Below are positions 25,821-63,492 of a stretch of 64,000 nt of DNA, in pieces (positions within the stretch are counted from its first letter, which is position 1; every line of letters begins with the position of its first letter). This stretch comes from Lepidodermella squamata (lineage: Eukaryota > Animalia > Gastrotricha), in the NCBI GenBank assembly GCA_047495785.1, contig JBLDXI010000034.1:372001-436000 (forward strand), given 5' to 3'. The position numbers and the translations under genes are program-made. The notes beneath the pieces are model-generated. The model was not told the origin of the DNA, did not search any database, and was given only the letters and a program-made list of their open reading frames with translations.

Positions 25821-27543
25821 TATATTCATGAGGTGTCATGAAACTAGGGCATTCTTAGTTAAGAGCCAAAAATTGCAGAAAAATTTAAGGTTATAACAAA
25901 TCAAAAATAATTTTTCCATAATTTTTCTGACATAATTAGCACCCTATGAATATTCATATTCTTAAAACTATTAAAACTTCTTTGTCTGTCCGAGTTACAC
26001 TCTTTGTTTTAGCTGAGTTTAACCCAAGCTCGAAGCTAAAAATAGTTCGGGCGCATGTGAGCTATTTTTAGTTTGAACTCAACAAATTCCTGGCCGTGCG
26101 TAACTTTTGATTTTCACTGAAGTTATCTCTGTTTTTTCGCCCACTCTTAACGGTGAATTATCTTTTGAAAAATGAATAGCGTGAAATTCATATGCTATCA
26201 TAAAAAGTGCTATAATTTATGCTCAGCTAGTGGAGCTAGTTACACTCATCTTTCACGGAGAGGGCAAAGGTCGTTGATATTTCCAATATGGGCAATTTCA
26301 TGTCATTTCATCGTGGATCATCGATCATCGGGGAGGATTTTTTTGGGATGGAGCTCGAAAAAATAAGGCATATTTACGCTTGCGACTTTTTTCATCCGAC
26401 GTAGTCGCTCGTGGTAATTTAATTTCCATTCGAACAACGTCAAACCCCAAGTAATCAGATCACAGACCACCGTGAACCTTCTTCTTCAGATCGGAGCTCA
26501 GAGAAGTTTGCTCGTGAGGGTTTTCTCCAGGGTGCGATCTTGGATCTCCGAGCTTGGAGATTTTTCACTAATACACCCTCCAGAAGCTTCCAAAATTAAC
26601 AAAACAGTGGAATAAATTATCATTTTGTCGTCTGGCCCGGCCCGGCCCGGACCATTAGTGCTGAGTTTCCAGTGATGAATCATCCAGTGATGATGATGCT
26701 GTTGCTGATATCAGAAACAGCAAATAGCCGGGCCATGAGTACTTCAAAAGTTCATCCTTTAAACAATAGATTCGAGTCGAATATCGCAACTTGCGCGCCA
26801 TAATAGTGTGCCGGAAATAGAAACAAACTATGATGACACATACGATCCAACTTTAATTACAGTATGCCAATTTTCATCAAGGAATGCCGCGCTGTAATAA
26901 CAAATATCCGATTTATTAATACTGCTTCTCTCATCTTGGCTCAAAATTTGCCAATGTGAATGCGTTGATATTATCTGAGGCTCAACTAATTATTGGCGTA
27001 ATCGCGTCACATGGGAACAATTGCGCGATCAATTCACCGCATGGAAAAAAATGGCAGTTCAAAAAATGAGCTTTTCCATCTCATTACCGTATTATTGTCA
27101 GAGCCGTAAGTAAGCTTCCGCCCGAATGGCTCATTATGCCACGACGCAGTAATTTATAGTCTTGCTTATGCTCGAGATTACACTTGCTATCGATCGGAAC
27201 GTGAAAATGACTAATTCAGAGTAGTTTAAGACATGAAGTTATTCGGTCGAATTTTCTGTTAACAGTTAAAAATCACGCAATTACAACATCACAAGCACGA
27301 TTATTGTCATTCGATTGGATTTTTCCAGATGATGGGTAGATTGACTTTTCCCACTTGAGTTTTTCGCTAGTCTTGCGCTTGACATCGGCAGAAATGCTGG
27401 CATAACAGTTCCCAGCCCTATGCAAGGCTGTTTTATTATGGCGAAGGTGACTAGGAACTTCGTGAGGAGAATATCGCCAACGCCGTGATGGCCGCGATAT
27501 GCGGCTGCCATAAATGCAGCGTCGCACCATCGTTCCGCACAGC

Positions 27544-29558
27544 TTACACTTTGGCGTTATATCGGCCACCTAGCGCCTCTACCACCTCGACATGGCCCTG
27601 CCGGGTGGCGATGTCCAGTGGTTTCCAGCCATAATTTGTGGCCTTATTCACGTCGGCGTTGAACTCACCAACCAACGTCCTCACGACCTCGACGTGGCCC
27701 TCATTTGCGGCGGCGTACAGTGGCGTCCAGCAACTATTATTATCCGTGGCCTTATTCACATCGGCGTTGAACCCACCAGCCAACGTCCTCACCACCTCGA
27801 CGTGGCCCTTGTAGGCGGCGGTCCACAGTGGCGTCCAGCCATTTCTATCGGCCCTATTCACGTCGGCGTTGAACTCACCAGCCAACAGCCTCACCAACTC
27901 GACGTGGCCATTGATGGCGGCGGTCCACAGTGGTGTACGGCCATCATTGGTGGCGGAATTAACATCGGCGTTGAACTCACCAGCCAACGTCTTCACCACC
28001 TCGACGTGGCCATTGAAGGCGGCGGTCCACAGTGGCGTCGCGTCTTTTGAATTATGAACTTCAATGACTGCATCAAATTGCCTGGCCAGAATTTCCACAA
28101 TGTCATTGTAGCCCTTTTGGGCCGCAAGGTACAACAGAGGGCAACCCTCTTCGTCCATGCAGTCAGGGCTAAGATTTAGGTCACTGTTCGACAGTAGCTG
28201 CGCCACTTTCAACAGGTCTTTCCGCCGACACACGCAGTCAAACAGCTCCTAGTTATTTCAAGAATGAATCAAGCGAGAAAGGTAAAATATTCCGAATATA
28301 CCCTAACAGCATCTTTGTTGGGTTCAGCGACTGATTGGTCCGGCTGAAGAATATGCATGGGTTGCAATGATTCAAATGTAAGATACGGAAAATTCATCAT
28401 ACCTTCGTATACCGCATAGGTGCTGATTTCAACAGAAAATTGTTTTCTTGAAGCTGAGTTGAGGTCGGTCGATCGTCAGGATTGACGGCAAGCATTGCCA
28501 TGACAAAATCCCGGAATTCATTGGAATAGCCGAGTGACTCGTCAAAAGGTTTCAAGTCATTACTAAAGTTATTATAGATTTCAGTCAGAGGCAACTCATA
28601 AGTGCGTCAAACTCATAGGTTTACCTCGAAATAGTCGCCATATTGAGGAACTGGAAAATTAATAAGTAACACTCAGTAGTCAATCACGCAAGATCATTCT
28701 CATACTGGTTCATAAAAGTTGGCTAATTTGAAGAGCGTGTATCCAAACGACCAAACATCACTTGCAGCTGATTTCGGTTCGCGCTTTAATTCATCAGGAT
28801 TTAATACCTCAGGAGGCGAAGTGTTCCACTTCGCTAGAGCAAACAGTTGTGAGCCACTGTTTGGAATATACAACACCTTATTAACGGTTAAATGCTCCTC
28901 TTCAATCTTACGTGTCTAATTTCTCGATGATTCCCAACTCAGCTAGTTTCGCTGTGCCTCGGTCTTCTGTTAACAGCAAATTGCTTGCCGTAATGTTGCG
29001 ATGAACGATACCTCGGCCGTGAAGAAAAGTTAAAGCTGATACGACTTGGCGCGACCATATTTGAAGCATAATTTCCGGGATGGGTCTAGTCTCAGGAGTG
29101 ATCAGGCTTTCGAAACTTCCTCCCTCACAAAACTCCATCACCAAATATCTCATCATGCAGTTGCGAGAAGAGGAATCTTCACCGAAATATGTCTCTATAG
29201 TTGGAATATTATTATTAAGAACTAAGGGGAGTGGAGCATTACCTTCGAAAGCGCCGAACACCTTGACAATGTTTGCATGGCTGATTGTGGCCATTAACAA
29301 ATCCTGCAATTTGAAAATATGACATGAATTATTGGGGTCACGGCGAAAACTCACTCTTTCGTGGAGAAGTTCAGCAATTTTGTCGTAGTGTTTTTCGAAA
29401 GTCTTGCGAAGGGCTGTCATGTTGGTTTCTTTGATAACCACTTGCTGTTGATCACGCCCATTACTTTTGCACAACATAGGTTGTCGTAGGCCGCCATGAC
29501 GCAAGACTTTACCAACCGTGAACTCCGACATAGATCGAGGATAATTTCTTGGTTCCAT
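27544..29558 (-). CDS. Pseudokinase-ankyrin gene, copy A (6 intact repeats; premature stop, decayed last two repeats to about 27350)
   Basis: Kinase motifs VVIKE, HANIVK, YLVMEFCEGG, HRNITASN, KLAELG, PPE, SDVWSFG and DRP are spread over short-intron exons, then the ankyrin exon 27544-28248. Exon structure matches copies B and C. Confidence 0.85.
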
Positions 29559-29814
29559 ATTCAATCCGAAGCTAAAAATAAAGGAAGGGAAGTAAAATTT
29601 GCCCTTGGGAATTAGGAAAGAGGAGAAAGCCTCATTACAAAAGGAACCTATTTCTTCAAAGCTACGGTGATAAGAAATCGGAGATACCGGTGGCTCGTCA
29701 TATCATATCTGCCAGAAACACGCTGAAACGCGCATTAATACTTGTACTCTAATCTCTGGACGAGGTTTGCCGGTAATATAGAGACCTCTTGGTATCTTTA
29801 TGTTTACGACCTTA

Positions 29815-31305
29815 TATGACGGGGAACTCCCCGTTGTCGTCGTCCGTGTTCAGTCGTTCGGTGCGTACGTCGAGGAGAATTGTCATTGTAACAAAAAAAC
29901 AGGTTAAAAAAAGCTCAGGATGATATGTATTTCACGTTAAAAAATCGAAAAAAGTTGCCGGGGCCATAATGCAGGCGTGTGCGATGATTTACGCACACCT
30001 GGCGCACACCTCTCTTGCAATTTTAAAGCTCACTGGGCGACTAGCGAATAGCAATATCCAATTACCACTGTCGGCCTAGCGGCCTACGACAGTTGACGTG
30101 GAACTCCCGGTAACGAAACGAATAATATTGGTGAAAGCGACGCGGGTGCAACTTTCGACGAATGCATTGTCAAAATGCATTTCCGTCTTTTAACTCAAAA
30201 ACCTCGGCAGTTTTGCGCTGTTGTTTTATTTCGAAAAATTAACTTTTCGCGAAATTAGCTAGAAATTCTAACATACATTGCTACCTGTACACAGTTATCA
30301 CATCGCTCTCAATTTTTTGCCTATTGTGTATCAAATTAAAAATGCTTAGTGCCCTTAGTGTCGCGATTTTGAAAGACTTGTCACCCACTGTCACCCACTT
30401 TAATGTCTTTTGGGAAAAGGAACGTTGACCAGTGTTTCGACATCAGGAATGATGTCGTCAGTGAAGGAAATCGAAGCGGAGTCGTTAATGTACAGCTGGA
30501 AAGTGGGTGCTTTGATGTAACTCGAGCTGGAATCTTGTGTATTGGCTTTCCAATTTTTTCAGATATAAGCTTTATGGCAGCCGCGTTCCGCGTTTACGGC
30601 AAGCAATGTCTTGCCAAACGTAGGATTTAGCTGCGCTCGAACCTTTCATGTACTGGTACCGAGCATATGCTGTCCTAAAACCCGGGCAAGTCGAGAAAGC
30701 GGCTGAAATTTATTATGTAATGTGATTACGATTAAGGAACATGCTGGCTCTCGTGACATGGCGTCACCAGTCGTCGTTCACCTGTTTTCTACCCTGCTAT
30801 GAAAAAGCTCTCGTGCACTTGCAATTCGTACTATTTTCTAGCACGTGCGGCATGGCGACTTATGACCTGCGACTGACGCGCTTACGCTTTCGTAAAACCC
30901 CTTACTCGGCGCATGCGCGCTACTTTTACCAAATGTGACTAATACCTAAACGTTCAAATACTAGCACATTCGTGATTTGTAGCTCATCTTGAATTTAAGC
31001 CCATGTGAGCCCATGGACACAATCAGTGTAGGTGGCGGCCGAATGACTCTCAGATGAAGGATCAATAATTCCATCAGGGAATTACGCCGCCGTCGCGCGT
31101 GGGTGACACGTTACATGGCTATGCGCAAAGCATAGGGATCACTCCGTTCTCTTCATGGCGCAAAGCAGGGCAACAAGTCAAGGATGTGCACGAAAACGTT
31201 ATATGTACTTGGCTCTTAGGCATCTTCAAGGGCGTGCCATTGTGCTTGACAAAGTCACGGAGTTCCCCGTCAACTGTCAAAGGCCGCAGGCCGACAGTGG
31301 TAATT
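29815..31305. mobile_element. About 1.5-kb insertion in the NmrA-kinase spacer of cassette A
   Basis: About 47-bp inverted repeat at 30060-30107 / 31259-31305 (TACCACTGTCGGCC...GACG(G/T)GGAACTCC), plus a partial third copy at 29817. The flanks rejoin to match the spacer of cassette C near 52750. Confidence 0.65.
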
Positions 31306-31510
31306 CATCTTGCACCTCCACAGAGTGAAAACGGAAGTATTATGTTGGAATGAAAGATGAACTGCCCTCATGGTGTGGCAAGAGTCATTTCAAGTTTTCG
31401 GAAATCAAAATCGCAGAAGTTTATTATTTAAGATAACCCGATGAATCAATCAAAAATTCTGCAGTCTTTAATGGAGTTGAGTCAGTTCTCTCAAAATTTT
31501 CCCTTGCTCT

Positions 31511-32836
31511 TCAAGGAGCTTTGATAAGTTTGCCGTACTTCGCCAAGAACTGATCAAAGTTCATAAGTTTCGGGTTCAGCTTTTTCGTAGCTTCGAAATC
31601 GCGGCTAGCAGTCAATGGCTCGGAGAAATCCTGGTAAAACTGGAACATGTTAGCCATATCAGCGGCGCCAGGAAACGGAAAGGTCCGGAAAACTTCGATA
31701 GGCGTTGGCTGGTACACAACCTCCTCACCCAGAACCTTGCCAACCTTCTCAGCTTGCTCGCTCATCGTCATTGTTTCACTGGCAATCGCAATTCGCTTGC
31801 CAATCCAAGTTGGGTCTTTGAAAATTCCGTAAGCACAACGGCCAATATCGTCTACGGCCATTCCAGGCGTTTTGACGTGCCCCATCGGCGCCGTGATCAT
31901 CAATTTACTATCCTGGCCACGATGCATCGCGACCATGCCGGTACAGAAGTTGTCCCAAAATCCCGGGGTTACCATAAAGGTAACAGGCTGGCCGTCGAAG
32001 AATTTGTCGGAGCCAGCTTTAGTCTCGCAGAATGGTACTTTGTACTTGCCATGCAAAGTTGGTAATCGATCGTCGTTAAGAGGTCCAAATTTGTGAGGGT
32101 CATCCAAGGTAGACCAGATAACATGCTTGATCCCAGCTTTCCTAAAAAAAATAGGTCAGGATAGGATATTATAGGACAGATAGGATAAGTGGTCACACGT
32201 CGCTATTTTTTATATAATTTTTCAAATTTTTTGATTTATAAGAAGGAGAATAATGGATCGCTTGAATTTTTACTGAAATTTACTGAAACTTTACCGGGGC
32301 AAGTTTTACTTCTTGCGAATTTCGTATTCTATTGTATAAATTTTTTCAAATCATTTTAATTTTATTTCCATTTTAATTTGGGTTTTGGGGATTTTTATTT
32401 CAGTAGAATGGGAATTCTTCCTAAGGATTCCATTTCCTAGGGACATGGCAGAAAGTATGCTTCAACTTGCCTCGCTGCGTTAGCCATAGACTTGATTTGT
32501 GTAGTTTCTTTCTCGGGGTCAGCCCAATCGATGACCGACACGCAAAACAATCCATACGAGCCTTTGATAGCCTCGGCCAACGCGTCCTCATCGTTAGCAT
32601 CGACCTGAACGACTTCGACACCTTGCTCAGTCAAGGCCTTTGCTTTCGCCGAATTTACATCTCGGGTTAAGGCTCGAGCCTTGAATTCGGTAGTAGGATC
32701 TTCCAAAATCGCTCGAACAACAGCGCCACCCTTCAGAGAATAAATATAATTTATAAAGCAGCTCTAAAAGTTGATACTGTACCTGTTGTCCAGTTGCTCC
32801 TACAACAGAAATGATTTTCTTGTCAGATGCCATCAT
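31511..32836 (-). CDS. NmrA/HSCARG-like atypical SDR protein, copy A (3 exons)
   Basis: VVGATGQQG Rossmann motif, RALTRD, GIKHVIWSTLDD, DIGRCAYGIF, FPGAADMANMFQF. Confidence 0.92.
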
Positions 32837-37199: not shown

Positions 37200-37790
37200 C
37201 GACGTATCTAGTGTTGGCGGAAGTTTTTTTTTAATGTGAACAACAGCGCGAAGAATTTGCGACCATTTTCCTTTTTTATTTGAGATTGTGACGTTTCGAC
37301 GTCATCTAGCCATGTGTTTACCAATTACGCCACTCTTGTGTTCAACAATACGCTTATGTAGGTGTCGGCCTGTATAGCCGACATAGTTGGAACTGCACCA
37401 ACCACATTTGAATCGGTAAATCACGCATTGCTGATTGACAATTAGCGGCTTCTTTTCCTTTGGTCCAAATTCGGCGTTAATCTTGCGACTGATGAAGACG
37501 GGCTGTACTTCCTGTTCGATCTTGTTGCTCAGTTCGTGCAGTTCAGTCTTTACTTTTCTTGACGCGTTTTCGCTCTTGTCAGCGGGTTTGCCAGCAGGCA
37601 TGGCAAATTTGCTCTCTAGGAACCTTTCGATAACTCGCTCGACCAACTCATCAGGATAGAGAAGGTTTTTGAACACGTTTCGAAGTCGAGAAACTTCCAT
37701 GTCGAAGAGGAGCCACGTCGAGGAAAGCTTGTAAGCGCGGTGTAACGTGTTCAAAAACCTTATCTATCCCTGATGAGTTGGTCGAGCAAC
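37200..37790 (-). mobile_element. Penelope-like retroelement fragment (RT C-terminus plus GIY-YIG endonuclease)
   Basis: TLHRAYKLSS...YP...CVIYRFKCGWCSSNYVGYTGRHLHKRIVEH. Confidence 0.85.
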
Positions 37791-38240
37791 CACTACTTGG
37801 TGTTTTTCCTTCAGCTGTTTGACAACAACAAGCTTACACGCGTATCGTCGTCATTCGTCATCACGATAGACAGTGATGAACGAAAATTGTCAGCCTTGTC
37901 GGTCAAATTAACAATTTGAAAGCCATGGCTACATAGTTGCACTGTCTTTAATAGTTTTACCACACAATTCTTCAGACCTCAGTTCGAGAACACAACTTGA
38001 ACGAAAATATTTTGAAATGACACGAGAAAATATTTCGATCATGGGTTCTTTCAATAACAGGGATCTTTCAATAACATTTGACTCATGGGACTTCTAACTT
38101 CTAGCTAACTCTAATTTCAAAATTCTGATGTTGTCTATCGAATCTCCTTTGATATTTCAAAAAATAACGGGGTTGAACTTAAATCTATAACGAAGATATG
38201 AATAACCAACTCGGTCAAAACAATGCATAGAAGCGAATTA
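37790..38240 (-). promoter_or_regulatory. Orphan copy of the NmrA upstream region
   Basis: Colinear similarity to 32950-33400 and 44038-44480 (aaccact...cagct..ttgac..taacaagct.acacgcg), with no NmrA coding sequence attached. Confidence 0.6.
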
Positions 38241-42705: not shown

Positions 42706-43941
42706 TTAAGGAGCTTTGATAAGCTTGCCGTATTTCACCAGAAACTGATCAAAGCTCATGAGTTTCGGGTTCAGCTTCTTCGTAGATTCGTAATCGATGC
42801 TAGCATTGAATTTCTCGGTGAAATCTTGGTAAAACTGGAAAATGCTCGCCAATTCACCCGCGCCAGGAAACGGAAAGGTCCGGAAAACTTCGATAGGTGT
42901 AGGCTGGTACAAAATCTCCTCGCCTAGAACCTTACCAACCTTCTCAGCTTGCTCGCTGACCGTCATCGTTTCACTAGCAATCGAAATTCGCTTGCCAATC
43001 CAAGTTGGGTCTTTAAAAGCTCCGTAAGCACAACGGCCGATATCGTCTACGGCCATTCCGGGCGTTTTGACATTCCCCAACGGCGTTGTGATCGCCAATT
43101 TACCATCTTGGCCGCGATGCATTGGTTCCAAGCCGGTGCAGAAGTTGTCCCAAAATCTTGGTGCTATCAGAAACGTGACAGGCTGACCATCGAAAAATTT
43201 GTCAGAGCCAGCTTTAGTCTCGCAGAATGGTATTTTGTATTTGCCATGCAATGTTGGAAATCGATCGTCGCTGAGTGGTCCAAATTTGAGAGGGTCGTCC
43301 AGGGTAGACCAGACAACATGCTTGATCTCAGCTTTCCTAAAAAAACAGGGTTATCACAAATCACTATTTTTTATGCATTCATTTTTTCAAAAGGAGAAAA
43401 TAAAGCGTTTGAATTTTAATAATTAATTCGAGTTTAAGTAATTGAGGAATTTCTGAAAAATCTTCAAAAATCGTATCATTTTGTTTCGATTTCAATTTGG
43501 CGATCTTTGATTTTCAGATCGAAAGTACTTTTGTTTGAATGCTTTCTTAGGAAAAGAAGGAATTATTTTTCAACTTGCCTTGCCGCGTTAGCCATGGACC
43601 TGATCTGGGCTATTTCTTTCTCAGGATCAGTAAAATCAACAACCGAGACGCAAAACAAGCCGTACGAGCCTTTGATAGCCGCAGCCAACGCGTCCTCATC
43701 ATTAGCATCGACCTGAGCGAGTTCGACGCCTTGCTCAGCCATAGCCTTGGCTTTCGCCGAGTTGACATCTCGGGTTAAAGCTCGAGCCTTGAAATCGGTG
43801 ACAGGATCCTCCAAAATCGCCCGAATAACAGAAGCGCCCTTCAAAAATTCAACAAATTACAACTATAATCTCAAAATGTTGATGATTTACCTGTTGGCCA
43901 GTTGCTCCTACAACAGAGATTATTTTCTTTCCAGATGCCAT
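42706..43941 (-). CDS. NmrA/HSCARG-like protein, copy B (3 exons)
   Basis: Paralog of copy A with the same intron positions and an open frame. Confidence 0.92.
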
Positions 43942-46663: not shown

Positions 46664-46687
46664 GTTTACCCTGCATTGAAGCCTGCT

Positions 46688-47979: not shown

Positions 47980-48250
47980 AGGAGCTTTGATAAGTTCGCC
48001 TTGTACGTCACCAACAACTGATCAAACGTCATGAGTTTCCGGTTCAGCTTATTCGTCGTTTCGAAATTCGCGCCTAGCTTCAATTGCTCGGAGAAATTCT
48101 GTGAAACTGGAACAAGAAGTTCCGGAAAACTTCGATTGGCGCTGGACGATACACAATTTCCTCGCCTATAGAACCTTGCCAACTTTCTCAGCTTGTTCGC
48201 AAATTTTCATCTTTTTTCGCAAATTCGCTGGCCAATCCAAGTCGGGTCTT
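47980..48250 (-). pseudogene. NmrA-like 3' pseudogene fragment
   Basis: Frameshifted match to the C-terminal third of NmrA (…FSEQLKLGANFETTNKLNRKLMTFDQLL). Confidence 0.85.
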
Positions 48251-48384
48251 TCACATAATCGAAAATCCGAATAGACAATAAAAAAATGCACGAAAAATGT
48301 TATCATCTGGGACCAAGTTGAACGCGTTTATGTGTTGATCTCATCTTGCTTATATATTTTACTCTAATTTATTTTGATTTACCT

Positions 48385-51411: not shown

Positions 51412-52523
51412 ATGGCACTTGAAAAGAAAATCATTTCTGTTGTAGGAGCAACTGGACAACAGGTAAAGCATCGAAATTCTAAGATTTTTCCTGAAGTTTG
51501 TTCAATTTCTGAAGGGTCGATCTGTTGTTCGAGCGATCTTGGAGGATCCTGCAACTGAATTCAAGGCTCGAGCTTTAACCCGTGATGCCAACTCTGCGAA
51601 AGCCAAGGCCCTGGCTGAGCAAGGTGTCGAAGTCGTTCAGGTCGATGCTAACGATGAGGATGCGTTGGCCGAGGCTATCAAAGGCTCGTATGGATTGTTT
51701 TGCGTCTCGGTAATCGACTGGACCGATCCAGATAAAGAAATCGCACAGATCAAGTCGATGGCTAGCGCGGCAAAGCAAGTTGAAAAATAATTTCCTACCT
51801 TGTCCTAGGAATAATAATCCAGGCTCAAACGCTTTAATATTGTCATTCTATAAAAATCCTACAAAGAAATTAAAGATTTGTCTGTATTTTAGGAAAGCTG
51901 GAATCAAACATGTTATTTGGTCTACCTTGGATGACCCTCACAAATTTGGACCCCTTGGCGACGATCATTTTCCAACTTTGCACGGCAAGTACAAAGTAAC
52001 GCACTGCGAGACGAAAGCTAACTCAGACAAGTTCTTCGATGGCCAGCCTGTTACCTATCTGATAACCCCAGCATTTTGGGACAACTTCTATACTGGCTTT
52101 TTCCCAATGCATCGCGGCCAGAATGGTAAACTGATGATTACAGTCCCAATGGGGCATGTTAAAACGCCTGGGATGGCCGTAAACGATATTGGCCGTTGTG
52201 CTTACGGAATTTTCAAAGACCCATTATGGATTGGCAAGCGAATTGCAATTGCTAGTGAATCGATGACGGTCAGCGAGCAAGCGGAGAAAATAGGCAAGGT
52301 TCTAGGTGAAGAGATTGCGTACCAGCCTGCGCCAATGGAAGTTTTCCGAAACCTGCCGTTTCCTGGCGCGGGTGAATTGGCGAACATGTTCCAGCTTTGC
52401 CAGGATTTCTCCGAGCAATTGAATGCTAGCCGCGATTTCGAAGCTACGAAGAAGCTGAACTCGAAACTAATGAACTTTGATCAGTTTCTGGCGAAATACG
52501 GCAAACTTATCAAAGCTCCTTGA
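51412..52523 (+). CDS. NmrA/HSCARG-like protein, copy C
   Basis: Exons 51412-51462, 51515-51774 and 51893-52523 (second intron GC-AG); GATGQQG motif; open frame. Confidence 0.92.
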
Positions 52524-52989
52524 AGAACGTGGGACAATGTTGAGAAAAATGACTCATCTCCACTTTGAAGACTGCACAATTATCGATGATTGCTAATGAT
52601 ATTTTTGAGTTCACGAATAACTTGAAAGAATAAACCTCTATGATTTCGATTTCCAAAGCCCTGAATTTACTCTTGCCGTATGCCGCAACGGCGATTTATC
52701 TTTCATGCACGACTATGATATTTTTTTTTTATTCTATGGAGGTGCAAGTTGAATAAGTCGTCGAACAGATAACAAGCCCGAGTCGCCTCTAACACCCTCT
52801 CTCAGAGATAAGAGAGGAGTACAAATGATTATGCGTTCAAATTTCAGCGCATACGCCGATTTCTTATCGCCGTAACTTGTAAGAATTAAGCTGCTTATAA
52901 TGTCGCTCATTTGTTGAAGCTTTATTCCTATTTGCTGTTTGATAAGGCCGGCTTTTTACTCTGCCATAATTTCTAGCTTCGCATTGAAT

Positions 52990-55900
52990 ATGGAACTAAA
53001 GACGCATCCAACGATGTCGCAGTTCACTGTAGTTGAAACCTTGCGTCATGGCCGCCTACGAAAATCTCTATTGTGCAAACGTAACGGGAGCCCTCAAGAA
53101 CGAGTAGTTATCAAAGAAACCAACTTAACGAATCTTGAGAAAAACTTCAACGGAATTGGTGAACTTCTCCGTGAAAGAGTGAGTTTCAAATGCTCAGAGT
53201 TTTCAAAATTCGATTCATAATAATGAGTTGAAATAAAGTTAAGTTAAATTGAAATTGAGTTAATTTCTAATGTGAGGATCTTTTCGTCTATATATATGCC
53301 TTGATGGTGTTTTCCCAAGGCTACTCAATCAAAACTCGAAGTAGTTGAAATGAGGTTACTTCGAAGACAAGTAAACCTCAACAATTCATTTCATATTTCA
53401 AATTGCAGGATTTGTTGATGGTCGATATCAACCATGCAAACATTGTCAAGGTGTTAGACGCTTTCGAAGGTAACGTTCTACTTCCCTTAGTTCTTAATAA
53501 TAATATTCCAATAATAGAGACATATTCCGGTGAAGATTCTTCTTCTCTCAACTGCAAGATGAGGTATTTGGTGATGGAGTTTTGCGAGGGAGGAAGTTTC
53601 GAAAGCTTGATCGCGACTGAGACTGCACCCATCCCAGAAATTATGCTTCAAATATGGTCGCGCCAACTTGTATCAGCTTTGGCTTACCTTAACGACCGAA
53701 AAATCGTTCGTCGCAACATAACGACAAGCAATGCACTGCTAACAGAAGACCGAGGCCCAGCTAAACTGGCTGATTTGGGAATGGTCGAGAGATTAGACAC
53801 GTATGACTGAAAAGAAGCATTTAATCCTAGATAAATTCGATATTCAAAACAGTGGTTCGCAAATAACCGCTCTAGCTGCATGGTACCCTTCCGCTCCTGA
53901 GATTTTGCAATGTCAACCGAAATCATCTGCAAGTGATGTTTGGTCGTTGGGATTCGCGCTCTTCAAATTAGCCAACTTCCAAGAACCAGTATGACAATGA
54001 ACATGAATGTACGCGATGATTTACTTTTGTTTTATCCTCCCCCAGTTCATCTCAACGGCGGATATTTTAAGGTAAACTCATGAGTTGGATACAGAGGTCT
54101 CAAGCTTAAATCTATGATACTTTAGTAATAAACAGAAACCATTCGACGAGTCACGTGGCTATTCCGTTGAATTCCGGGATTTTGTCATGTCAATGCTTGC
54201 CGTGAATCCTGATGATCGACCGGCCTCAACTCAGCTTAAAGCCAGTAGTTTTCTGTTGAAATCAGCACCCATGCGGTATACAAAGGTATGATTGGTTTCC
54301 ATTTCATCTGAATTGTTGCTGCAGACTTGATTCATCTTTCCTTCTATACTTCAGCCAGAACATACGTTAGCTGAACCCAACCAAGTGGCTGTTAAGGTAG
54401 CTGCGGATTATTCGACAATTGATTCAGGCTTTAGTAATTTAAATTGCCAGGAGTTATTTGACTGCGTAATGAAGCGAAAAGATGTGTTGAAATTGGTGCA
54501 GCTACTCTCTAACAGTGATCTCGGTCTTAGCCCGGACTGCAAAGACGATGATGGATTGCCTCTGTTGTACCATGCAGCTGGGAAAGGCTACAACGACATT
54601 GTGGAAACTCTGGTCAGGCAATTTGAGGCAAACATTGAAGTTCGTAATGCTAAAGGTTCAACACCACTGCTGATTGCCGCCTTCAATGGCCACATCGAGG
54701 TTGTGAAGATGTTGGCTGGCGAGTTCAAGGCGAACGTGGAATCGGCGCTCGAAGTTGGGGCCACGCCACTGTTTGTCGCCGCCCAGAATGGCCATGCAGA
54801 GGTTGTGAAGTGTCTGGCTGGCGAGTTCAAGGCGAACGTGGAATCGGCGCTCGAAGATGGCACGACACCACTGTATGTCGCCGCCCAGAATGGCCACGTC
54901 GAGGTTGTGAAGATGTTGGCTGGCAAGTTCAAGGCGAACGTGGAATCGGCGCTCGAAGATGGGGCCACGCCACTGTATGTCGCCGCCCGGAATGGCCACG
55001 TCGAGGTTGTGAAGATGTTGGCTGGCGAGTTCAAGGCGAACGTGGAATCGGCGCTCGAAGATGGGGCCACGCCACTGTTTGTCGCCGCCGAGAATGGCCA
55101 CGTCGAGGTTGTGAATATGTTGGCTGGCGAGATCAAGGCGAACGTGGAATCGGCGCTCGAAGATGGGGCCACGCCACTGTTTGTCGCCGCCGAGAATGGC
55201 CACGTCGAGGTTGTGAATATGTTGGCTGGCGAGTTCAAGGCGAACGTGGAATCAGCGAATAAATATGGGGCCACGCCACTGTATGTCGCCGCCCGGAATG
55301 GCCACATCGAGGTTGTGAGGATGTTGGCTGGCGAGTTCAAGGCACACGTGGAATCGGCGCTCGAAGATGGCACCAGACCATTGTGTACCGCTGCTCTGAA
55401 TGGCCACGCCAAGGTGGTGACAATGTTGGCTGGCGAGTTCAATGCCGACGTGAATTCTGCAGATAAAGATGGCTTTACGCCACTGTATGTCGCCGCCCAG
55501 AATAGCCACATCGAGGTTGCGAGGATGTTGGCTGGCGAGTTCAAGGCGAACGTGGAATCGCCGAAAAATAATGGGGCCACGCCACTGTTTGTCGCCGCCC
55601 AGAATGGGCACAAAGATGTTGTGAAAATGTTGGCTGGCGAGTTCAAGGCGAACGTGGAATCGGCGCTTAAAGATGGCACGACACCATTGTGGATCGCCGC
55701 CCAGAATGGCCACATCGGGGTTGTGAAGATGTTGGCTGGCGAGTTCAAGGCGAACGTGGAATCGGCGCTCGAAGATGGGGTAACGCCGCTGTTTGTCGCT
55801 GCCTTCAATGGCCACATCGAGGTTGCGAGGATGTTGTCTGGCGGGTTCAAGGCGAACGTAGAATCAGCGAATAAAAATGGGGCCACGCCACTGTATGTCG

Positions 55901-58122
55901 CCGCCCGGAATGGCCACATCGAGGTTGCGAGGATGTTGGCTGGCGAGTTCAAGGCGAACGTGGAATCAGCGAATAAAAATGGGGCCACGCCACTGTATGT
56001 CGCCGCCGAGAATGGCCACATCGAGGTTGCGAGGATGTTGGCTGGCGAGTTCAAGGCGAACGTGGAATCGCCGAAAAATAATGGGGCCACGCCACTGTTT
56101 GTCGCCGCCCAGAATGGGCACGCCGAGGTTGTGAAGATGTTGGCTAGCGAGTTCAAGGCACACGTGGAATCGGCGCTTAAAGATGGCACGACACCATTGT
56201 GGATCACCGCCCAGAATGGCCACGCCAAGGTGGTGAGGATGTTGGCTGGCGAGTTCAAGGCACACGTGGAATCGGCGCTCGAAGATGGCACCAGACCATT
56301 GTGTACCGCTGCTCTGAATGGCCACGCCAAGGTGGTGACAATGTTGGCTGGCGAGTTCAATGCCGACGTGAATTCTGCAGATAAAGATGGCTTTACGCCA
56401 CTGTATGTCGCCGCCCAGAATGGCCACATCGAGGTTGCGAGGATGTTGGCTGGCGAGTTCAAGGCGAACGTGGAATCGCCGAAAAATAATGGGGCCACGC
56501 CACTGTTTGTCGCCGCCCAGAATGGGCACAAAGATGTTGTGAAAATGTTGGCTGGCGAGTTCAAGGCGAACGTGGAATCGGCGCTTAAAGATGGCACGAC
56601 ACCATTGTGGATCGCCGCCCAGAATGGCCACATCGGGGTTGTGAAGATGTTGGCTGGCGAGTTCAAGGCGAACGTGGAATCGGCGCTCGAAGATGGGGTA
56701 ACGCCGCTGTTTGTCGCTGCCTTCAATGGCCACATCGAGGTTGCGAGGATGTTGTCTGGCGGGTTCAAGGCGAACGTAGAATCAGCGAATAAAAATGGGG
56801 CCACGCCACTGTATGTCGCCGCCCGGAATGGCCACATCGAGGTTGCGAGGATGTTGGCTGGCGAGTTCAAGGCGAACGTGGAATCAGCGAATAAAAATGG
56901 GGCCACGCCACTGTATGTCGCCGCCGAGAATGGCCACATCGAGGTTGCGAGGATGTTGGCTGGCGAGTTCAAGGCGAACGTGGAATCGCCGAAAAATAAT
57001 GGGGCCACGCCACTGTTTGTCGCCGCCCAGAATGGGCACGCCGAGGTTGTGAAGATGTTGGCTAGCGAGTTCAAGGCACACGTGGAATCGGCGCTTAAAG
57101 ATGGCACGACACCATTGTGGATCACCGCCCAGAATGGCCACGCCAAGGTGGTGAGGATGTTGGCTGGCGAGTTCAATGCCGGCGTGAATTCTGCAGATAA
57201 AGATGGCTTTACGCCACTGTTTGTCGCCGCCGAGAATGGCCACATCGAGGTGGTGAAGATTCTGGCTGGCGAGTTCAAGGCCGACGTGGAATCGCCGAAA
57301 AATAATGGGGCCACGCCACTGTATGTTGCCGCCCAGAATGGCCACATCGAGGTTGCGAGGATGTTGGCTGGCGAGTTCAAGGCGAACGTAGAATCAGCGA
57401 ATAAAAATGGGGCCACGCCACTGTATGTTGCCGCCCAAAATGGCCACATCGAGGTTGCGAGGATGTTGGCTGGCGGGTTCAAGGCGAACGTGGAATCGGC
57501 GCTCGAAGATGGGGTAACGCCGCTGTTTGTCGCTGCCTTCAATGGCCACATCGAGGTTGCGAGGATGTTGGCTGGCGGGTTCAAGGCGAACGTAGAATCA
57601 GCGAATAAAAATGGGGCCACGCCACTGTATGTTGCCGCCCAAAATGGCCACATCGAGGTTGCGAGGATGTTGGCTGGCGAGTTCAAGGCGAACGTGGAAT
57701 CAGCGAATAAAAATGGGGCCACGCCACTGTTTGTCGCCGCCGAGAATGGCCACATCGAGGTTGCGAGGATGTTGGCTGGCGAGTTCAAGGCGAACGTGGA
57801 ATCAGCGAATAAAAATGGGGCCACGCCACTGTATGTCGCCGCCGAGAAGGGCAACCTCGAGGTGATTGAGGCACTAGCTGGCCAATTCAGCGCCAAAGTA
57901 AATGCTGCTCGTAATGATGGTAGGACCCCGTTGATGGTCGCTGCATATAATGGCCATCACTATGTTGCTGAAGTTCTCCTTACGAAATTCCAAGCAAACA
58001 TCGACGCCGTAGATCGCCGTAATAAGACAGCCTTTCATTGGGCCACGAACTGCGATGATAGTGTTTCTGCTGATGACAAGCGCAAGACTATCGAAATACT
58101 TGAGCGGCCAAAATTAAAATAG
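52990..58122 (+). CDS. Pseudokinase-ankyrin gene, copy C (about 35 ankyrin repeats)
   Basis: Exons approx. 52990-53178, 53409-53469, 53518-53800, 53853-53988, 54046-54071, 54126-54285, 54355-54396 and 54451-58122 are phase-compatible. Motifs RRNITTSN, KLADLG, APE, SDVWSLG; 34-aa repeats follow. Confidence 0.92.
54660..57900 (+). repeat. 102-bp coding tandem repeat (ankyrin units) with a 918-bp higher-order duplication
   Basis: Repeats 9-17 recur as repeats 18-26. Identical off-frame ORFs at 55689/56607 and 55877/56795 are each 918 bp apart. Confidence 0.97.
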
Positions 58123-59680
58123 CTCGCTGTCAAACATTTACCTAGACACAATGACCCAATAATTTATCGATAAACAAAGGTGAAACTATATAAAAACTCT
58201 TGCGCTGGTAAATTGTTGTAGCCCAGGGCTAAACTCTATTCAAGAATATGTTGACTAAAACGTCCCTCAATAAAAACGAAGATGGAAGTATCATTTTCTT
58301 TTGCGTATTATCGAATTATAGATGGATAAGAGTCGAAGCGTCTATCTCACTCATCGCATTAGTAATTCATTTTATTAGCTGAAGCAAGAACATTATCCGA
58401 GTGCCGAACAACAATGGCAAACACGCAGCCATCGAATGGGACAAAGAAGCAAGTTACAACTGCGACGAAAGCAGCTGCAACTAATTCAAGAACCACTACC
58501 GGACGGGTTGAATTATTTAGGCAATTGGCTTGCAATTATGTGAATTGGGTGGCAATGGTTTGGCAGGAATAAAAACTGTGTACTAAAATGGGATAGTTTG
58601 CTAGTGTTTCACCTAGGGAATAACAGGTAAACAATCATTGTGGAACCACTCGAAAGTCAAATTTCATGCGCACGCTGATTGGTCAGCCGATCGTTGCTAT
58701 GACTCCCGGAGGAAGCATTCAGTCGTGCGATCCATGAGATATTTTGCAACACGTGATTTCAGCCACAGTAATTTACTACGATTTAAATGGAGTTTGCGCT
58801 CGTGGTTAATGGAATACGTGCAGAATGTGTGGCAAGATCATTTTTACATGAAAATAAACTCTAACTCTAAGCTAAACTCTACACGTGCAGACGTCGAAGC
58901 GTCTATCTCACTCATCGCATTAGTAATTCATTTTATTAGCTGAAGCAATGGGATGTCCCTCAATAAAATTGCGTATTTTGCATTATCCGAGTGCGACGAA
59001 TCGCGACGAATTCTTTCAACCTTCGATTAAATATTTAATCACCTTAATTATGATTAAATATTTAATTTAATTTAATAAAAATTATTTTATTTTCATCCGC
59101 ACGGCAGAAATGTAGCCATAGCGAAATTGACAGGGTAGACTTGATCTAAAATCGGTTTGTCGAAAACTAGGTTAAATCGACTTACCCGGCCAACGGTGAG
59201 CTGGTACAACGGGAGTTGAGTCAACATGCTCATCAAGACCCAGCGGATCGTCTCGTGCTAAAAAATGGGCGGAAAATCCTCAAATTCGAAAGAAATCCGG
59301 AATAGGGGGTCGGCCCAAGCCTGGTGCATTTTTTTAAAAGAATTCTTTCAAAATTGAGCCAACAAGTACCTTAATTAATGGTTGGAAATTTCGACTTCTA
59401 GGAGACTCCGAAGCAGGGTTGGACGGTGTAAAAACATCATGTAAAAACGTGTTAAAACATGCAAAATCGAAAAAAATTGGAAAATGTAAATACCTGTAAA
59501 ATCCTCGGCCTGCCACGTGCTGTAGCAGGCCAAATACGAATGATTGTTCAGCTTCTAAGCTCCATCCCTGCCTCAAAGGTGCTGAACAATACTCCTTAAA
59601 AAAACAGCCCCCCCCCCCCCACAATTTTTGACAGTGAAGATATCAATTTAATGTACTTAGTTTCCACCGCTAGATGGTTG

Positions 59681-60708: not shown

Positions 60709-61621
60709 AAAGTGATCTGTCGAAAGACCACTTTTTCGAAAATTTAGTAAAAATTTATTTTCAATCGGTTTAAAATGTATTTGGTGCCATTAGATAGAGC
60801 GCAAAATTCTCTACAAGCGTACTGCAACAGTTAAATATCGACTCTATCCAGCTTGGAGCGCGCAGGAAAAAACCTTGTTACACAGCTATTAAAAATACGC
60901 AAAGTACTTGTGTGTGCGCATGCAAGAGAATAGTCATACTTGTAAAATTTTTCCTCATTTACAACAAACGCAAATACCGTCAACAAATATGCCAGTGGAA
61001 CGAGCGCAGAAAACTGCAAATGCCAATTTTGATATCACAATCAAGTCATTAGCCGTTAGAAAGTCATCAAGGTAAACGCATGTTAGTCGCTTGATAAATG
61101 CCTAAAGTGGTCTGTCAAAAGACCACTTTTTCGAAAATTTAGTAAAAATTTATTTTCAATCGGTTTAAAATGTATTTGGTGCCATTAGATAGAGCGCAAA
61201 ATTCTCTACAAGCGTACTGCAACAGTTAAATATCGACTCTATCCAGCTTGGAGCGCGCAGGAAAAAACCTTGTTACACAGCTATTAAAAATACGCAAAGT
61301 ACTTGTGTGTGCGCATGCAAGAGAATAGTCATACTTGTAAAATTTTTCCTCATTTACAACAAACGCAAATACCGTCAACAAATATGCCAGTGGAACGAGC
61401 GCAGAAAACTGCAAATGCCAATTTTGATATCACAATCAAGTCATTAGCCGTTAGAAAGTCATCAAGGTAAACGCATGTTAGTCGCTTGATAAATGCCTAA
61501 AGTGGTCTGTCAAAAGACCACTTTTTCGAAAATTTAGTAAAAATTTATTTTCAATCGGTTTAAAATGTATTTGGTGCCATTAGATAGAGCGCAAAATTCT
61601 CTACAAGCGTACTGCAACAGT
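60709..61621 (+). repeat. 395-bp tandem repeat, about 2.3 copies
   Basis: Units start at about 60711, 61106 and 61501. Identical ORFs at 60831 and 61226. Confidence 0.95.
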
Positions 61622-61980
61622 CTGACCGTCATCGCTTCACTAGCAATCGCAATTCGCAATTATCCCGGAGAAAATCTGTTCAACCGGGTAAAATACCGAA
61701 AATTACGGAACCAGTTACCATCGGGATTTCCGGGTTTTCCTCGGTAAATTATTTAGAAAATGTTTAATTTAAAATGAAATAAATTTATTTAAAAAATTTG
61801 CCAGTTTAAAAAAATTGGATGGGCAACTTCTGGGACTCGCTGCCATAATTTACGACTGAAATTAGGATCGAAGTGCTGAAATGTCGATAAAACCTCAATG
61901 TAATCTTGATTTTCGGTCACCTAAAATGCTTTTGTTAATTTTTATGTTAATTTAACAATTTTAAGCGACAATAAATGCAA
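61622..61980 (-). repeat. Inverted duplicate of 62885-63243
   Basis: Reverse complement matches by eye across about 359 bp. Confidence 0.93.
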
Positions 61981-62904
61981 GTTGGGACATTGCTCGATAA
62001 TTTCTCCATTGATAAAAGTTCCGAAAAAAATCGAGATAAAATATCTGATTTACTAACAAAAACCAGCGAAATTTTACTCGAAAATACGCGAAAAATTGAA
62101 AAAGGCCAGGAATATTTTGAAAAATTCATCGAAAATACAGTCGACTTGTGCCGTGATGAAATGTTGAAAATCGTCATCAAAAATGACCAAAGGGTGAAAG
62201 TAGAATTTTATTGTGAATTTTTCAAATTTTTTGCAAAATTATCCGAAATTTTGTATCACCGTGAAAATTTTCACGTCGACTTGAAGAAGGCTAAAGCTTT
62301 AATTGATGATTTTAATTCTAAAATTGCTAAATTCCCCGAAAAACTGACTTGGATGTCTGGTGAAGATCGCGAAGATTTTGCGGAAATTTTCAGATTTTTC
62401 AAGAAATTTTCCGAAAATTCCCTCGATTTTCTATCGAGTTATCGCGACTACGGCGAGAGCGATGTTCTCGGTTCGAGAATTGCAATTTACGAACAGCTCA
62501 AGACCCCAGGCAAGAAGGTTGTCTCGATTTTATTGAAGTGGAAATTGCGTGATAAAGCCAACGATTTGCGAACGAAATCGCCGCAGGAGAACGAGCAGAT
62601 TCTGCGCTATTGTCTGTATCTAGGTCAAGAATTTTACGGCCTCGTTTTCGCTGGGTTGACGTCGCAAATTGACAGCAAATCACGGCCAGAGTTGGTTGAA
62701 TGGCTGCTGGAGGCTAAAACGGCGACGGCTAAATTTTTGGCACTTCAACGCGAATCAGGCGGCGGTTTGACGGCGAGTGATCAGGAAATAGCGGCATTTC
62801 AGGCCGAATTGGATGCGATTGTTGACTCGGTTTTAAATGTTGTGAATCATTTCGACATTGCTCAGCTCGCTTTCAAGCGTTTTATTGCATTTATTGTCGC
62901 TTAA
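61975..62904 (+). CDS. 5'-truncated paralog of 49224-50606, with its ATG supplied by the inverted duplicate
   Basis: 309-aa open frame highly similar to residues from VGTLLDNF onward. Confidence 0.6.
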   Translation: MQVGTLLDNFSIDKSSEKNRDKISDLLTKTSEILLENTRKIEKGQEYFEKFIENTVDLCRDEMLKIVIKNDQRVKVEFYCEFFKFFAKLSEILYHRENFHVDLKKAKALIDDFNSKIAKFPEKLTWMSGEDREDFAEIFRFFKKFSENSLDFLSSYRDYGESDVLGSRIAIYEQLKTPGKKVVSILLKWKLRDKANDLRTKSPQENEQILRYCLYLGQEFYGLVFAGLTSQIDSKSRPELVEWLLEAKTATAKFLALQRESGGGLTASDQEIAAFQAELDAIVDSVLNVVNHFDIAQLAFKRFIAFIVA

Positions 62905-63207
62905 AATTGTTAAATTAACATAAAAATTAACAAAAGCATTTTAGGTGACCGAAAATCAAGATTACATTGAGGTTTTATCGACATTTCAGCACTTCGATCC
63001 TAATTTCAGTCGTAAATTATGGCAGCGAGTCCCAGAAGTTGCCCATCCAATTTTTTTAAACTGGCAAATTTTTTAAATAAATTTATTTCATTTTAAATTA
63101 AACATTTTCTAAATAATTTACCGAGGAAAACCCGGAAATCCCGATGGTAACTGGTTCCGTAATTTTCGGTATTTTACCCGGTTGAACAGATTTTCTCCGG
63201 GATAATT

Positions 63208-63492
63208 GCGAATTGCGATTGCTAGTGAAGCGATGACGGTCAGCGAGCAAGCTGAGAAGGTTGGTGAGGTTCTAGGTGAGGAGATTGTGTACCAGCCTGT
63301 GCCAATCGCTGTTTTCCGGACCTTCCCGTTTCCTGGCGCGGGGTAATTGGCGAGCATGTTCCAGCTTTGCCAGGATTTCACAGAGAAATTGAATGCTAGC
63401 CGCGATTTCGAAGCTACAAAGAAGCTGAACCCGAAACTCATGAACTTTGATCAGTTTCTCGCGAAATACGGCTAGCTTATCAAAGCTCTTTA
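63208..63492 (+). pseudogene. NmrA-like 3' pseudogene fragment
   Basis: RIAIASEAMTVSEQAEKVGEVLGEE... with internal TAA and TAG; the 5' two-thirds are deleted. Confidence 0.88.

What the first reader, a model, noticed from the sequence alone, without database searches (positions are those of the whole stretch)
27350..63492. Recurrently co-duplicated NmrA + pseudokinase-ankyrin cassette: candidate undescribed sensor/receptor system
Seen: three cassettes keep an NmrA-like gene directly upstream of a co-oriented pseudokinase-ankyrin gene. Spacers are about 470 bp in C, about 830 bp in B, and about 460 bp in A after removing an insertion. Two cassettes are on minus and one on plus, with further remnants at 1-555, 37.8, 48 and 63.2 kb. 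Known: NmrA/HSCARG proteins are NAD(P)-binding redox sensors acting through protein contacts (Aspergillus NmrA-AreA; human HSCARG dampens NF-kB signalling). Kinase-then-ankyrin order occurs in RIPK4/ANKK1, and pseudokinase switches occur in MLKL and RNase L. Inference: a birth-and-death family coupling a variable ankyrin recognition module, a pseudokinase switch and a redox sensor, possibly in innate immunity or allorecognition. I do not recognise this pairing from any described locus.
Basis: partly seen in the sequence, partly recalled or inferred. Interest (0 to 1): 0.88.

Follow-up and report, generated by a model that had tools for sequence, protein, structure and literature searches.

The report
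Duplicated NmrA plus pseudokinase-ankyrin gene pair
A two-gene block, a bacterial-type NAD(P)-binding NmrA gene followed by a dead-kinase gene with a variable ankyrin-repeat tail, is really present three times, intact; one copy was checked against RNA and is transcribed, but nothing yet shows that the two genes work together rather than just being copied together.

Summary
Three cassettes (A 27.3-33.1 kb and B 38.9-44.1 kb on minus, C 51.2-58.3 kb on plus) each carry an intact 3-exon NmrA/HSCARG-family gene (313-314 aa) directly upstream of an intact, co-oriented 8-exon gene. That gene encodes a cytosolic pseudokinase (HRD is HRN or RRN, glycine loop degenerate) with 6, 12 or about 35 ankyrin repeats.

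An RNA run covers only the exons of both cassette A genes. It confirms seven introns, including a GC-AG intron and both introns flanking a 26-nt micro-exon.

Synonymous divergence is alike in both genes (about 0.35-0.46). The similarity ranking is also the same (A-C closest, B most distant), so the pair was copied as one unit. Both genes are under purifying selection (omega about 0.2 and 0.5).

The interpretation as a coupled sensor/receptor system is not shown:
- All copies descend from one ancestral adjacency in one cluster.
- No relatives exist in the searched databases to test conserved linkage.
- Unchecked scan notes list 17 kinase-ankyrin findings elsewhere in this genome but only one other NmrA.

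This scan had already noted the kinase-ankyrin family on other DNA of this genome. The most likely reading is a birth-and-death segmental duplication of two neighbouring genes.

The parts
31511..32836 (-). NmrA gene of cassette A (nA), 3 exons, 314 aa, GATGQQG Rossmann motif
   Evidence: tblastn with bacterial homologues; spliced model intact; the GC-AG intron 32470-32142 is confirmed by spliced contigs in runs X1 and X3, and RNA depth falls on exons only
27544..29558 (-). Pseudokinase-ankyrin gene of cassette A (kA), 8 exons, 543 aa, about 6 ankyrin repeats
   Evidence: Model. Six introns are confirmed by RNA joints (29242-29195, 28911-28857, 28705-28651, 28624-28563, 28402-28344, 28301-28249), including both introns flanking the 26-nt micro-exon 28650-28625
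27350..27543 (-). Decayed C-terminal cap of kA: a stop codon followed by at least two frameshifts relative to kB and kC
   Evidence: Three-frame translation and alignment of C-termini; DNA is still homologous to B and C
30060..31305 (.). About 1.25-kb element with 47-nt terminal inverted repeats, within the ~1.6-kb stretch (29681-31303) inserted in the A spacer
   Evidence: Inverted repeats I1 and I2; very high depth at its end in DNA run X2 and none in RNA run X1; block boundaries
42706..43941 (-). NmrA gene of cassette B (nB), 313 aa
39115..41878 (-). Pseudokinase-ankyrin gene of cassette B (kB), 743 aa, about 12 repeats
   Evidence: Model with the same eight exons as kA; RNA run X1 holds 14% of the sampled words of the B cassette
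51412..52523 (+). NmrA gene of cassette C (nC), 313 aa
   Evidence: an RNA contig of X1 carries the 5' UTR sequence of nC (loose end at 32833, compared)
52990..58122 (+). Pseudokinase-ankyrin gene of cassette C (kC), 1522 aa, about 35 repeats of 34 aa
   Evidence: Model; array of 31 copies of 102 nt; a 918-nt higher-order duplication is 100% identical over at least 612 nt
1..552 (+). End of a further kinase-ankyrin gene (coding 1-135) and its 3' flank
   Evidence: tblastn 87% aa identity to the kC C-terminus; blastn 92.6% identity to 57982-58537
37810..37907 (-). About 100-bp fragment of the NmrA upstream flank
   Evidence: blastn 82.7% identity to 32983-33078 and 76.7% to 51168-51255
47980..48263 (-). 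Degenerate NmrA 3' fragment (pseudogene remnant)
   Evidence: tblastn about 32% aa identity over residues 208-306; blastn 70-73% identity
63209..63487 (+). NmrA 3' fragment (residues 220-312) of a partial cassette D
   Evidence: tblastn 84% aa identity to nC; its spacer follows C for about 170 nt, then diverges

Best explanation
This is a lineage-specific, birth-and-death gene cluster. It was made by repeated direct and inverted segmental duplication of a ~5-kb block that happens to span two neighbouring genes.

The upstream gene encodes a bacterial-type NmrA/HSCARG-family protein with an intact NAD(P)-binding Rossmann motif. The downstream gene encodes a cytosolic pseudokinase derived from STE20/NEK-like kinases, fused to a C-terminal ankyrin array. 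That array expands and contracts (6 to about 35 repeats) and varies at a subset of repeat positions.

Shown here:
- Three complete copies are intact.
- The pair was copied as a unit.
- Both genes are under purifying selection.
- Both genes of copy A are transcribed and correctly spliced, with no RNA over the spacer.

Inferred:
- The two genes are separate transcription units. This rests on the empty spacer in A and on an AATAAA motif I read about 100 nt after the NmrA stop in the spacer alignment.
- The pseudokinase-ankyrin protein acts as a non-catalytic scaffold or recognition protein, and belongs to a much larger kinase-ankyrin family in this genome.
- NmrA is an NAD(P)(H)-binding enzyme or sensor that may have arrived by ancient transfer from bacteria.
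- The pair stays together by descent from one adjacency, not because the products need each other.
For: - Three homologous blocks exist in both orientations, with no terminal inverted repeats at their ends.
- All six genes have intact ORFs with the same intron positions.
- NG86 dS is 0.42-0.46 for the NmrA pairs and 0.35-0.45 for the kinase pairs. A-C is the closest pair and B the most divergent in both genes. Omega is about 0.19-0.24 for NmrA and 0.51-0.58 for the kinase part.
- RNA run X1 covers exons only, confirms seven introns, and has zero depth across 29582-31255.
- Partial copies show gene loss: two NmrA fragments, a decayed kA C-terminus and the divergent spacer of D.
- The surroundings are rich in transposons: a reverse-transcriptase-like ORF, a weak GIY-YIG match and an element with inverted repeats.
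- The kinase has no relative above 39% identity in 1.8 billion representatives.
- NmrA is nearest to bacterial proteins.
- Scan notes list 17 kinase-ankyrin findings on other pieces of this genome and one other NmrA (unchecked).
Against: - All three complete cassettes kept both genes intact at dS about 0.4. That is more retention than expected for redundant, unrelated passengers.
- NmrA stays under fairly strong purifying selection in every copy.
- The genes are co-oriented with a short spacer.
- A 26-nt block around a splice-acceptor-like AG, 13 nt before the kinase ATG, is nearly invariant in all copies. It is in frame with the NmrA exon-2 donor, which leaves room for co-transcription or a joined isoform.
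- The absence of NmrA at other kinase-ankyrin loci rests on unchecked notes.
Confidence: 0.6

Rival explanations
1. The pair is a functional two-component module. The NmrA protein senses NAD(P)H/NAD(P)+ and binds or regulates the neighbouring pseudokinase-ankyrin protein, whose ankyrin array recognises ligands. The pair is kept in cis because partners co-evolve, as in an innate-immune or allorecognition-like sensor.
For: - Both genes are retained intact in all three full cassettes at dS about 0.4, with congruent divergence.
- Both genes of A are expressed in the same RNA runs, X1 and X3.
- Variation sits at a subset of ankyrin positions, with dN/dS about 1.0 there against 0.39 in the framework.
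- Human HSCARG acts through protein contacts in NF-kappaB and RIG-I-like receptor signalling (PMC4047896, PMC3999155).
Against: - There is no interaction, co-regulation or cross-species linkage evidence.
- Only one ancestral adjacency exists.
- The NmrA is bacterial-type and only distantly like HSCARG.
- Kinase-ankyrin genes appear at many other loci without NmrA (unchecked).
- Two remnants are NmrA fragments alone.
- The variable sites were chosen post hoc, and dN/dS does not exceed 1.
Confidence: 0.25
2. The two genes are co-transcribed, or are joined by splicing. This could be an operon-like unit resolved by trans-splicing at the conserved AG just before the kinase ATG. It could also be a conjoined isoform in which NmrA exons 1-2 (the Rossmann half) splice in frame onto the pseudokinase-ankyrin exons.
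For: - The sequence TTTTTAG|CTTCGGATTGAAT-ATG is nearly invariant in A, B and C, while the rest of the spacer has diverged.
- RNA depth stops within about 10-20 nt of that AG.
- The NmrA exon-2 donor (phase 2) plus the 13-nt leader reads in frame, without stops, into the kinase ATG in all three copies.
Against: - No joint linking the two genes appears among the 15 joints listed, and the spacer has zero RNA depth.
- NmrA appears to have its own conserved AATAAA about 100 nt after the stop (my reading of the alignment).
- An NmrA C contig reads collinearly through its own upstream AG, so there is no obligatory leader there.
- Frame compatibility has a one-in-three chance and is inherited, not independent.
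- Five joints and 79 loose ends were not shown, so the test is incomplete.
Confidence: 0.1
3. The cassettes are decaying duplicates, that is, pseudogenes without function.
For: kA has lost its C-terminal cap, and several fragments lie in the cluster.
Against: - Six intact multi-exon ORFs have conserved splice sites.
- Omega is below 1 in both genes.
- Cassette A gives spliced RNA.
Confidence: 0.05

Closest known systems
NmrA/HSCARG (NMRAL1) family, Pfam PF05368
   Same: Pfam NmrA match well above the cut-off; length of about 314 aa; N-terminal GxxGxxG Rossmann motif; human HSCARG is the best solved-structure match.
   Different: Much nearer to bacterial 315-aa NmrA/HSCARG proteins (about 51% identity, 226 bits) than to human HSCARG (66 bits). 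It carries two spliceosomal introns, one of them GC-AG. No evidence shows that it senses redox state or binds a signalling partner.
Kinase-then-ankyrin proteins (RIPK4/ANKK1; DAPK1)
   Same: An N-terminal kinase fold followed by C-terminal ankyrin repeats in one cytosolic polypeptide.
   Different: The kinase here lacks the catalytic Asp and a working glycine loop. Its best solved relatives are STE20-group kinases (SLK, STK10, MAP4K) and NEK1, not RIPKs. The ankyrin array is far longer and variable in number. That the compared proteins are active kinases is from my own knowledge.
Giardia Nek kinases with ankyrin repeats, many of them catalytically inactive (PMC3218828)
   Same: A lineage-specific expansion of Nek-like kinases with ankyrin repeats that includes catalytically inactive members. 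This rests on the title and term counts and on my own knowledge; the paper's text was not opened.
   Different: An unrelated lineage (this genome shows features typical of animals). No sequence kinship was shown. No NmrA partner is described there.
Pseudokinase-ankyrin scaffolds ILK and RNase L
   Same: A non-catalytic kinase fold combined with ankyrin repeats that serves as a scaffold or ligand sensor (from my own knowledge).
   Different: The domain order is opposite (ankyrin first). There are few, fixed repeats and single-copy conserved genes, not a variable multigene cluster.

Membership tests
NmrA/HSCARG family (PF05368) | Sequence match to the family profile above the curated cut-off | tested here: met
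   65-74 bits against a cut-off of 27 on the last exon alone; full-length alignment to bacterial members over residues 2-313
NmrA/HSCARG family (PF05368) | N-terminal Rossmann dinucleotide-binding motif GxxGxxG | tested here: met
   VVGATGQQG is present in nA, nB and nC
NmrA/HSCARG family (PF05368) | Acts as an NAD(P)H-dependent sensor through protein contacts, not as an enzyme | not testable with these tools
   Needs binding and activity assays
Pseudokinase (protein kinase fold lacking catalytic residues) | Protein kinase fold | tested here: met
   Pkinase 53-60 bits against a cut-off of 31.7 on partial ORFs; full subdomain order through APE, DxWSxG and the DRP Arg
Pseudokinase (protein kinase fold lacking catalytic residues) | Loss of at least one of the VAIK Lys, the HRD Asp or the DFG Asp | tested here: met
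   HRD is HRN (A, B) or RRN (C). DFG is ELG in A. The glycine loop has lost two of its three Gly. The VAIK Lys is kept
RIPK4/ANKK1-type kinase-ankyrin proteins | Kinase domain of the RIPK (TKL) group | tested here: not met
   The best solved-structure matches are SLK, STK10, MAP4K3 and NEK1 (E about 5e-12 to 1e-10). No RIPK is among the 60 shown
RIPK4/ANKK1-type kinase-ankyrin proteins | Kinase N-terminal, ankyrin repeats C-terminal | tested here: met
   Gene models
Conserved functional gene pair or two-gene system | Linkage found at independent loci or in other species | tested here: inconclusive
   No relative close enough to test was found in protein or metagenome collections. All copies here descend from one block. 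Scan notes suggest the pairing is absent elsewhere, but they are unchecked
Operon or co-transcribed unit | RNA spanning both genes, or a spliced leader on the downstream gene | tested here: inconclusive
   Zero RNA depth in the spacer of A and no listed joint between the genes. Five joints and 79 loose ends were not displayed
Gene acquired from bacteria | Nearest relatives are bacterial and the gene is integrated in the host genome | tested here: met
   Every named hit among the best 120 is bacterial; the rest are unnamed metagenome proteins. The gene has two spliceosomal introns confirmed or conserved, host-like flanks and spliced RNA
Gene acquired from bacteria | Absent from related eukaryotes, nested within bacteria in a tree | not tested
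   No eukaryotic relatives could be fetched for a tree. Only a bit-score contrast with human HSCARG is available

The most novel reading that the evidence does not exclude
A cis-linked cytosolic sensor pair. A bacterially derived NAD(P)(H)-binding NmrA protein would partner with, or through the conserved in-frame acceptor even be spliced onto, a STE20/NEK-derived pseudokinase. The expandable ankyrin array of that pseudokinase would serve as a variable recognition surface. Cognate partners would duplicate and diverge together, as in immune or allorecognition receptor families.
Probability: 0.2. Interest if true: 0.8.

Novelty: new member of a known kind. Interest (0 to 1): 0.42.

Why it matters
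If the two products do interact, this would be an undescribed animal sensor design. It would link metabolic or redox state (NmrA) to a variable-repeat pseudokinase scaffold, and it would be an example of a bacterial-type gene recruited into a diversifying receptor family.

As it stands, it documents three things:
- A well-supported, expressed, lineage-specific pseudokinase-ankyrin subfamily with copy-number-variable repeat arrays.
- An intron-bearing bacterial-type NmrA gene family.
- A clean case where co-duplication alone can mimic a gene 'system'.

Tried and rejected
1. Cross-species or independent-locus linkage. Four searches gave no family member:
- An exhaustive HMMER search with the kinase ORF gave hits of at most 39% identity, mostly unrelated multi-kinase proteins.
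- A word-indexed search with the family-specific ankyrin N-cap gave only generic ankyrin proteins.
- A JGI metagenome scan with a three-copy kinase alignment gave only kinases of 26-33% identity.
- The contig of the one collinear partial hit, P0127, is 1.2 kb and has no context.

2. Mobile-element cargo. No terminal inverted repeats flank any cassette.

3. Dead duplicates. Rejected by the intact ORFs, omega below 1 and spliced RNA.

4. My first gene model read a 218-aa ORF as continuous coding sequence. RNA joints showed a 48-nt in-frame intron inside it; a second in-frame intron of 51 nt in the same ORF is predicted from splice sites and from the homologous introns of B and C, but was not among the listed joints. 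The query therefore carried 33 intron-coded residues.

5. Positive selection on the ankyrin surface. dN/dS is about 1.0 at sites picked post hoc in kC and 0.38 in kB, which is not evidence of diversifying selection.

6. NCBIfam gave no family for NmrA. The Atlas search confirmed only the NmrA family.

7. Literature searches for the NmrA, ankyrin and pseudokinase pairing found nothing relevant.

8. Structure and multimer prediction was not run.

Full report
**What is there**

A self-comparison of the window shows three homologous blocks at 70-87% nucleotide identity: A 27350-33080 and B 38929-44088 on the minus strand, and C 51165-58315 on the plus strand. Pfam finds NmrA, protein kinase and ankyrin repeats in that order in each block. 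The window is eukaryotic and rich in transposons. It holds a reverse-transcriptase-like ORF at 4691-6076 (my reading of the translation), a weak GIY-YIG match at 37302-37754 and introns of about 50 nt.

**Gene models**

I located the NmrA exons with bacterial homologues. Each NmrA gene has three exons, a GT-AG intron of about 52 nt and a GC-AG intron of 118-329 nt with a GCAAGT donor at the same place in all copies.
- nA is 32836-31511, nB is 43941-42706 and nC is 51412-52523.
- All three are intact at 313-314 aa and keep the GATGQQG dinucleotide-binding motif.

The downstream gene has eight exons at the same positions in all three copies, including a 26-nt micro-exon and a 42-nt exon.
- kA is 29558-27544 (543 aa), kB is 41878-39115 (743 aa) and kC is 52990-58122 (1522 aa).
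- All three are open reading frames without internal stops.
- kA has lost its C-terminal capping repeat. There is a stop codon, and the homologous sequence behind it carries frameshifts.

**Transcription**

Contigs of public run X1 laid on cassette A cover only the exons of both genes. Depth is zero across the spacer (29582-31255) and across NmrA intron 2.
- The contigs carry joints with GT-AG ends on the minus strand for six kA introns. These include both introns around the micro-exon and a 48-nt in-frame intron that I had first read as coding.
- They also carry the joint for the NmrA GC-AG intron, which run X3 shows as well.
- One X1 contig continues into the 5' UTR sequence of nC, so nC is transcribed too.
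- X1 also holds 14% of the sampled words of cassette B.
- Run X2 behaves as DNA, with spacer cover and very high depth at the inserted repeat.

**The proteins**

Every named hit among the best 120 for NmrA is a bacterial NmrA/HSCARG-family protein of about 315 aa at about 50% identity (up to 226 bits); the remaining hits are unnamed metagenome proteins. Human HSCARG, the best solved structure, scores only 66 bits. With two spliceosomal introns and spliced RNA, the gene is resident in this genome. A bacterial origin is plausible but not tested by a tree. An earlier scan note made the same suggestion for another NmrA copy.

I aligned the kinase part with active relatives:
- The glycine loop is degenerate.
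- The catalytic Asp is replaced (HRN in A and B, RRN in C).
- DFG is ELG in A and DLG in B and C.
- The VAIK lysine, APE, DxWSxG and the subdomain XI Arg are kept.

It is therefore a pseudokinase by the usual criteria. Its nearest solved relatives are STE20-group kinases and NEK1, not RIPKs. The best hits among 1.8 billion representatives reach only 25-39% identity, and the top nine checked have several kinase domains or are fragments and none has ankyrin repeats.

The ankyrin repeats are 34 aa long and number about 6, 12 and 35. Variation is concentrated at positions 1, 4, 8, 9, 12, 33 and 34. At those sites dN/dS is about 1.0 in kC, against 0.39 in the framework, but the sites were chosen post hoc. 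kC holds a 918-nt higher-order duplication that is 100% identical over at least 612 nt.

**How the cluster arose**

Synonymous divergence is alike in the two genes: 0.42-0.46 for the NmrA pairs and 0.35-0.45 for the kinase pairs. In both genes A-C is the closest pair and B the most divergent. The two genes were therefore copied together and have not swapped partners. Omega is about 0.2 for NmrA and about 0.5 for the kinase part, so both are constrained.

The cluster also holds partial copies:
- the end of a further kinase-ankyrin gene at 1-135, with a flank 92.6% identical to that of C;
- a ~100-bp piece of the NmrA upstream flank at 37.8 kb;
- a degenerate NmrA 3' fragment at 48 kb;
- an NmrA 3' fragment at 63.2 kb, whose spacer stops matching C after about 170 nt.

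An orphan 460-aa gene (49224-50606) is co-duplicated with C and the partial copy D only. No terminal inverted repeats bound the cassettes. This is a birth-and-death cluster.

**Is it a system?**

Arguments for coupling:
- All three full cassettes kept both genes intact at dS about 0.4.
- The genes are co-oriented with short spacers (466, 827, and 1952 nt with a roughly 1.6-kb inserted stretch that contains the 1.25-kb element).
- A 26-nt block around an acceptor-like AG, 13 nt before the kinase ATG, is nearly invariant. It is in frame with the NmrA exon-2 donor in all copies.

Arguments against:
- Every copy descends from one adjacency.
- No RNA links the genes in the output shown.
- NmrA appears to have its own conserved AATAAA about 100 nt after the stop. 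This is my reading of the spacer alignment, not a motif search.
- No relative close enough to test conserved linkage exists in the collections searched.
- Literature searches found no such pairing.
- Unchecked scan notes list 17 kinase-ankyrin findings on other pieces of this genome but only one other NmrA.

I therefore put about 0.6 on co-duplication of neighbours without a required partnership. I put about 0.25 on a true two-component module and about 0.1 on co-transcription or a joined isoform.

**Comparison with known families**

The NmrA gene is a member of PF05368, with the profile and motif tests met. Its sensor function is untested.

The downstream gene is a pseudokinase with ankyrin repeats. 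It shares its domain order with RIPK4, ANKK1 and DAPK1 but fails RIPK-group membership. As an expanded Nek-like kinase family with ankyrin repeats and inactive members, it most resembles what is described for Giardia (PMC3218828; I did not open the paper's text). No kinship is shown.

HSCARG's action through protein contacts in NF-kappaB and RIG-I-like receptor signalling (PMC4047896, PMC3999155) is an analogy only.

**Limits**

- Only one lay of reads was allowed, and part of its tables was not shown.
- The kB and kC models rest on homology to the RNA-supported kA model.
- Spliced proteins could not be submitted to structure tools.
- The organism is not identified.

Noticed in passing
window 29571-29583, 41891-41903, 52965-52989: An acceptor-like TTTTTAG|CTTCGGATTGAAT lies 13 nt before the kinase ATG. 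It is nearly invariant in all three cassettes while the rest of the spacer has diverged. It is in frame with the phase-2 donor of NmrA exon 2. It could mark a 5' UTR intron, a trans-splice site or a conjoined isoform.
   Followed up: partly
window 49224-50606 and 61975-62904: An orphan helical 460-aa ORF has no Pfam family and no convincing Atlas match. It is duplicated (93% aa identity) just upstream of cassette C and of the partial cassette D, but not of A or B.
   Followed up: partly
window 60709-63243: A 359-bp inverted repeat that is 100% identical (61622-61980 against 62885-63243) brackets the second orphan ORF. Beside it is a 395-bp-period direct repeat (60709-61621, 99.6%). This is either a very recent rearrangement or an assembly artefact.
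   Followed up: no
window 30060-31305 (also 29817-29834): An element of about 1.25 kb with 47-nt terminal inverted repeats sits in the A spacer, within a ~1.6-kb stretch (29681-31303) that C lacks. Its end has very high depth in DNA run X2, and DNA contigs join across 29840-31273, so it is a multi-copy transposon family. It may be an insertion polymorphism.
   Followed up: partly
window 55505-57035: Inside the kC ankyrin array, a 918-nt unit (nine repeats) is duplicated with 100% identity over at least 612 nt. This is very recent array growth, or a collapse or expansion in the assembly.
   Followed up: partly
window 32142-32470, 43337-43578, 51775-51892: A GC-AG intron (donor GCAAGT) is conserved in all three NmrA genes and confirmed by spliced RNA in two runs for copy A.
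   Followed up: yes
window 28625-28650, 40805-40830, 54046-54071: A conserved 26-nt micro-exon lies inside the kinase C-lobe, flanked by introns of about 55 and 53-62 nt. RNA confirms it in copy A. Without it the reading frame breaks, so exon-blind gene finders would call these genes broken.
   Followed up: yes
window 51412-52523 and the other NmrA copies: The NmrA genes are far closer to bacterial NmrA/HSCARG proteins (about 51% identity) than to human HSCARG, which makes them candidates for ancient horizontal transfer. A scan note says the same of another copy elsewhere in the genome.
   Followed up: partly
window 4691-6076 and 37302-37754: A reverse-transcriptase-like ORF (my reading of its translation; no Pfam scan was run on it) and an ORF with a weak GIY-YIG match (E 0.0085, below the Pfam cut-off) lie between and beside the cassettes.
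   Followed up: no
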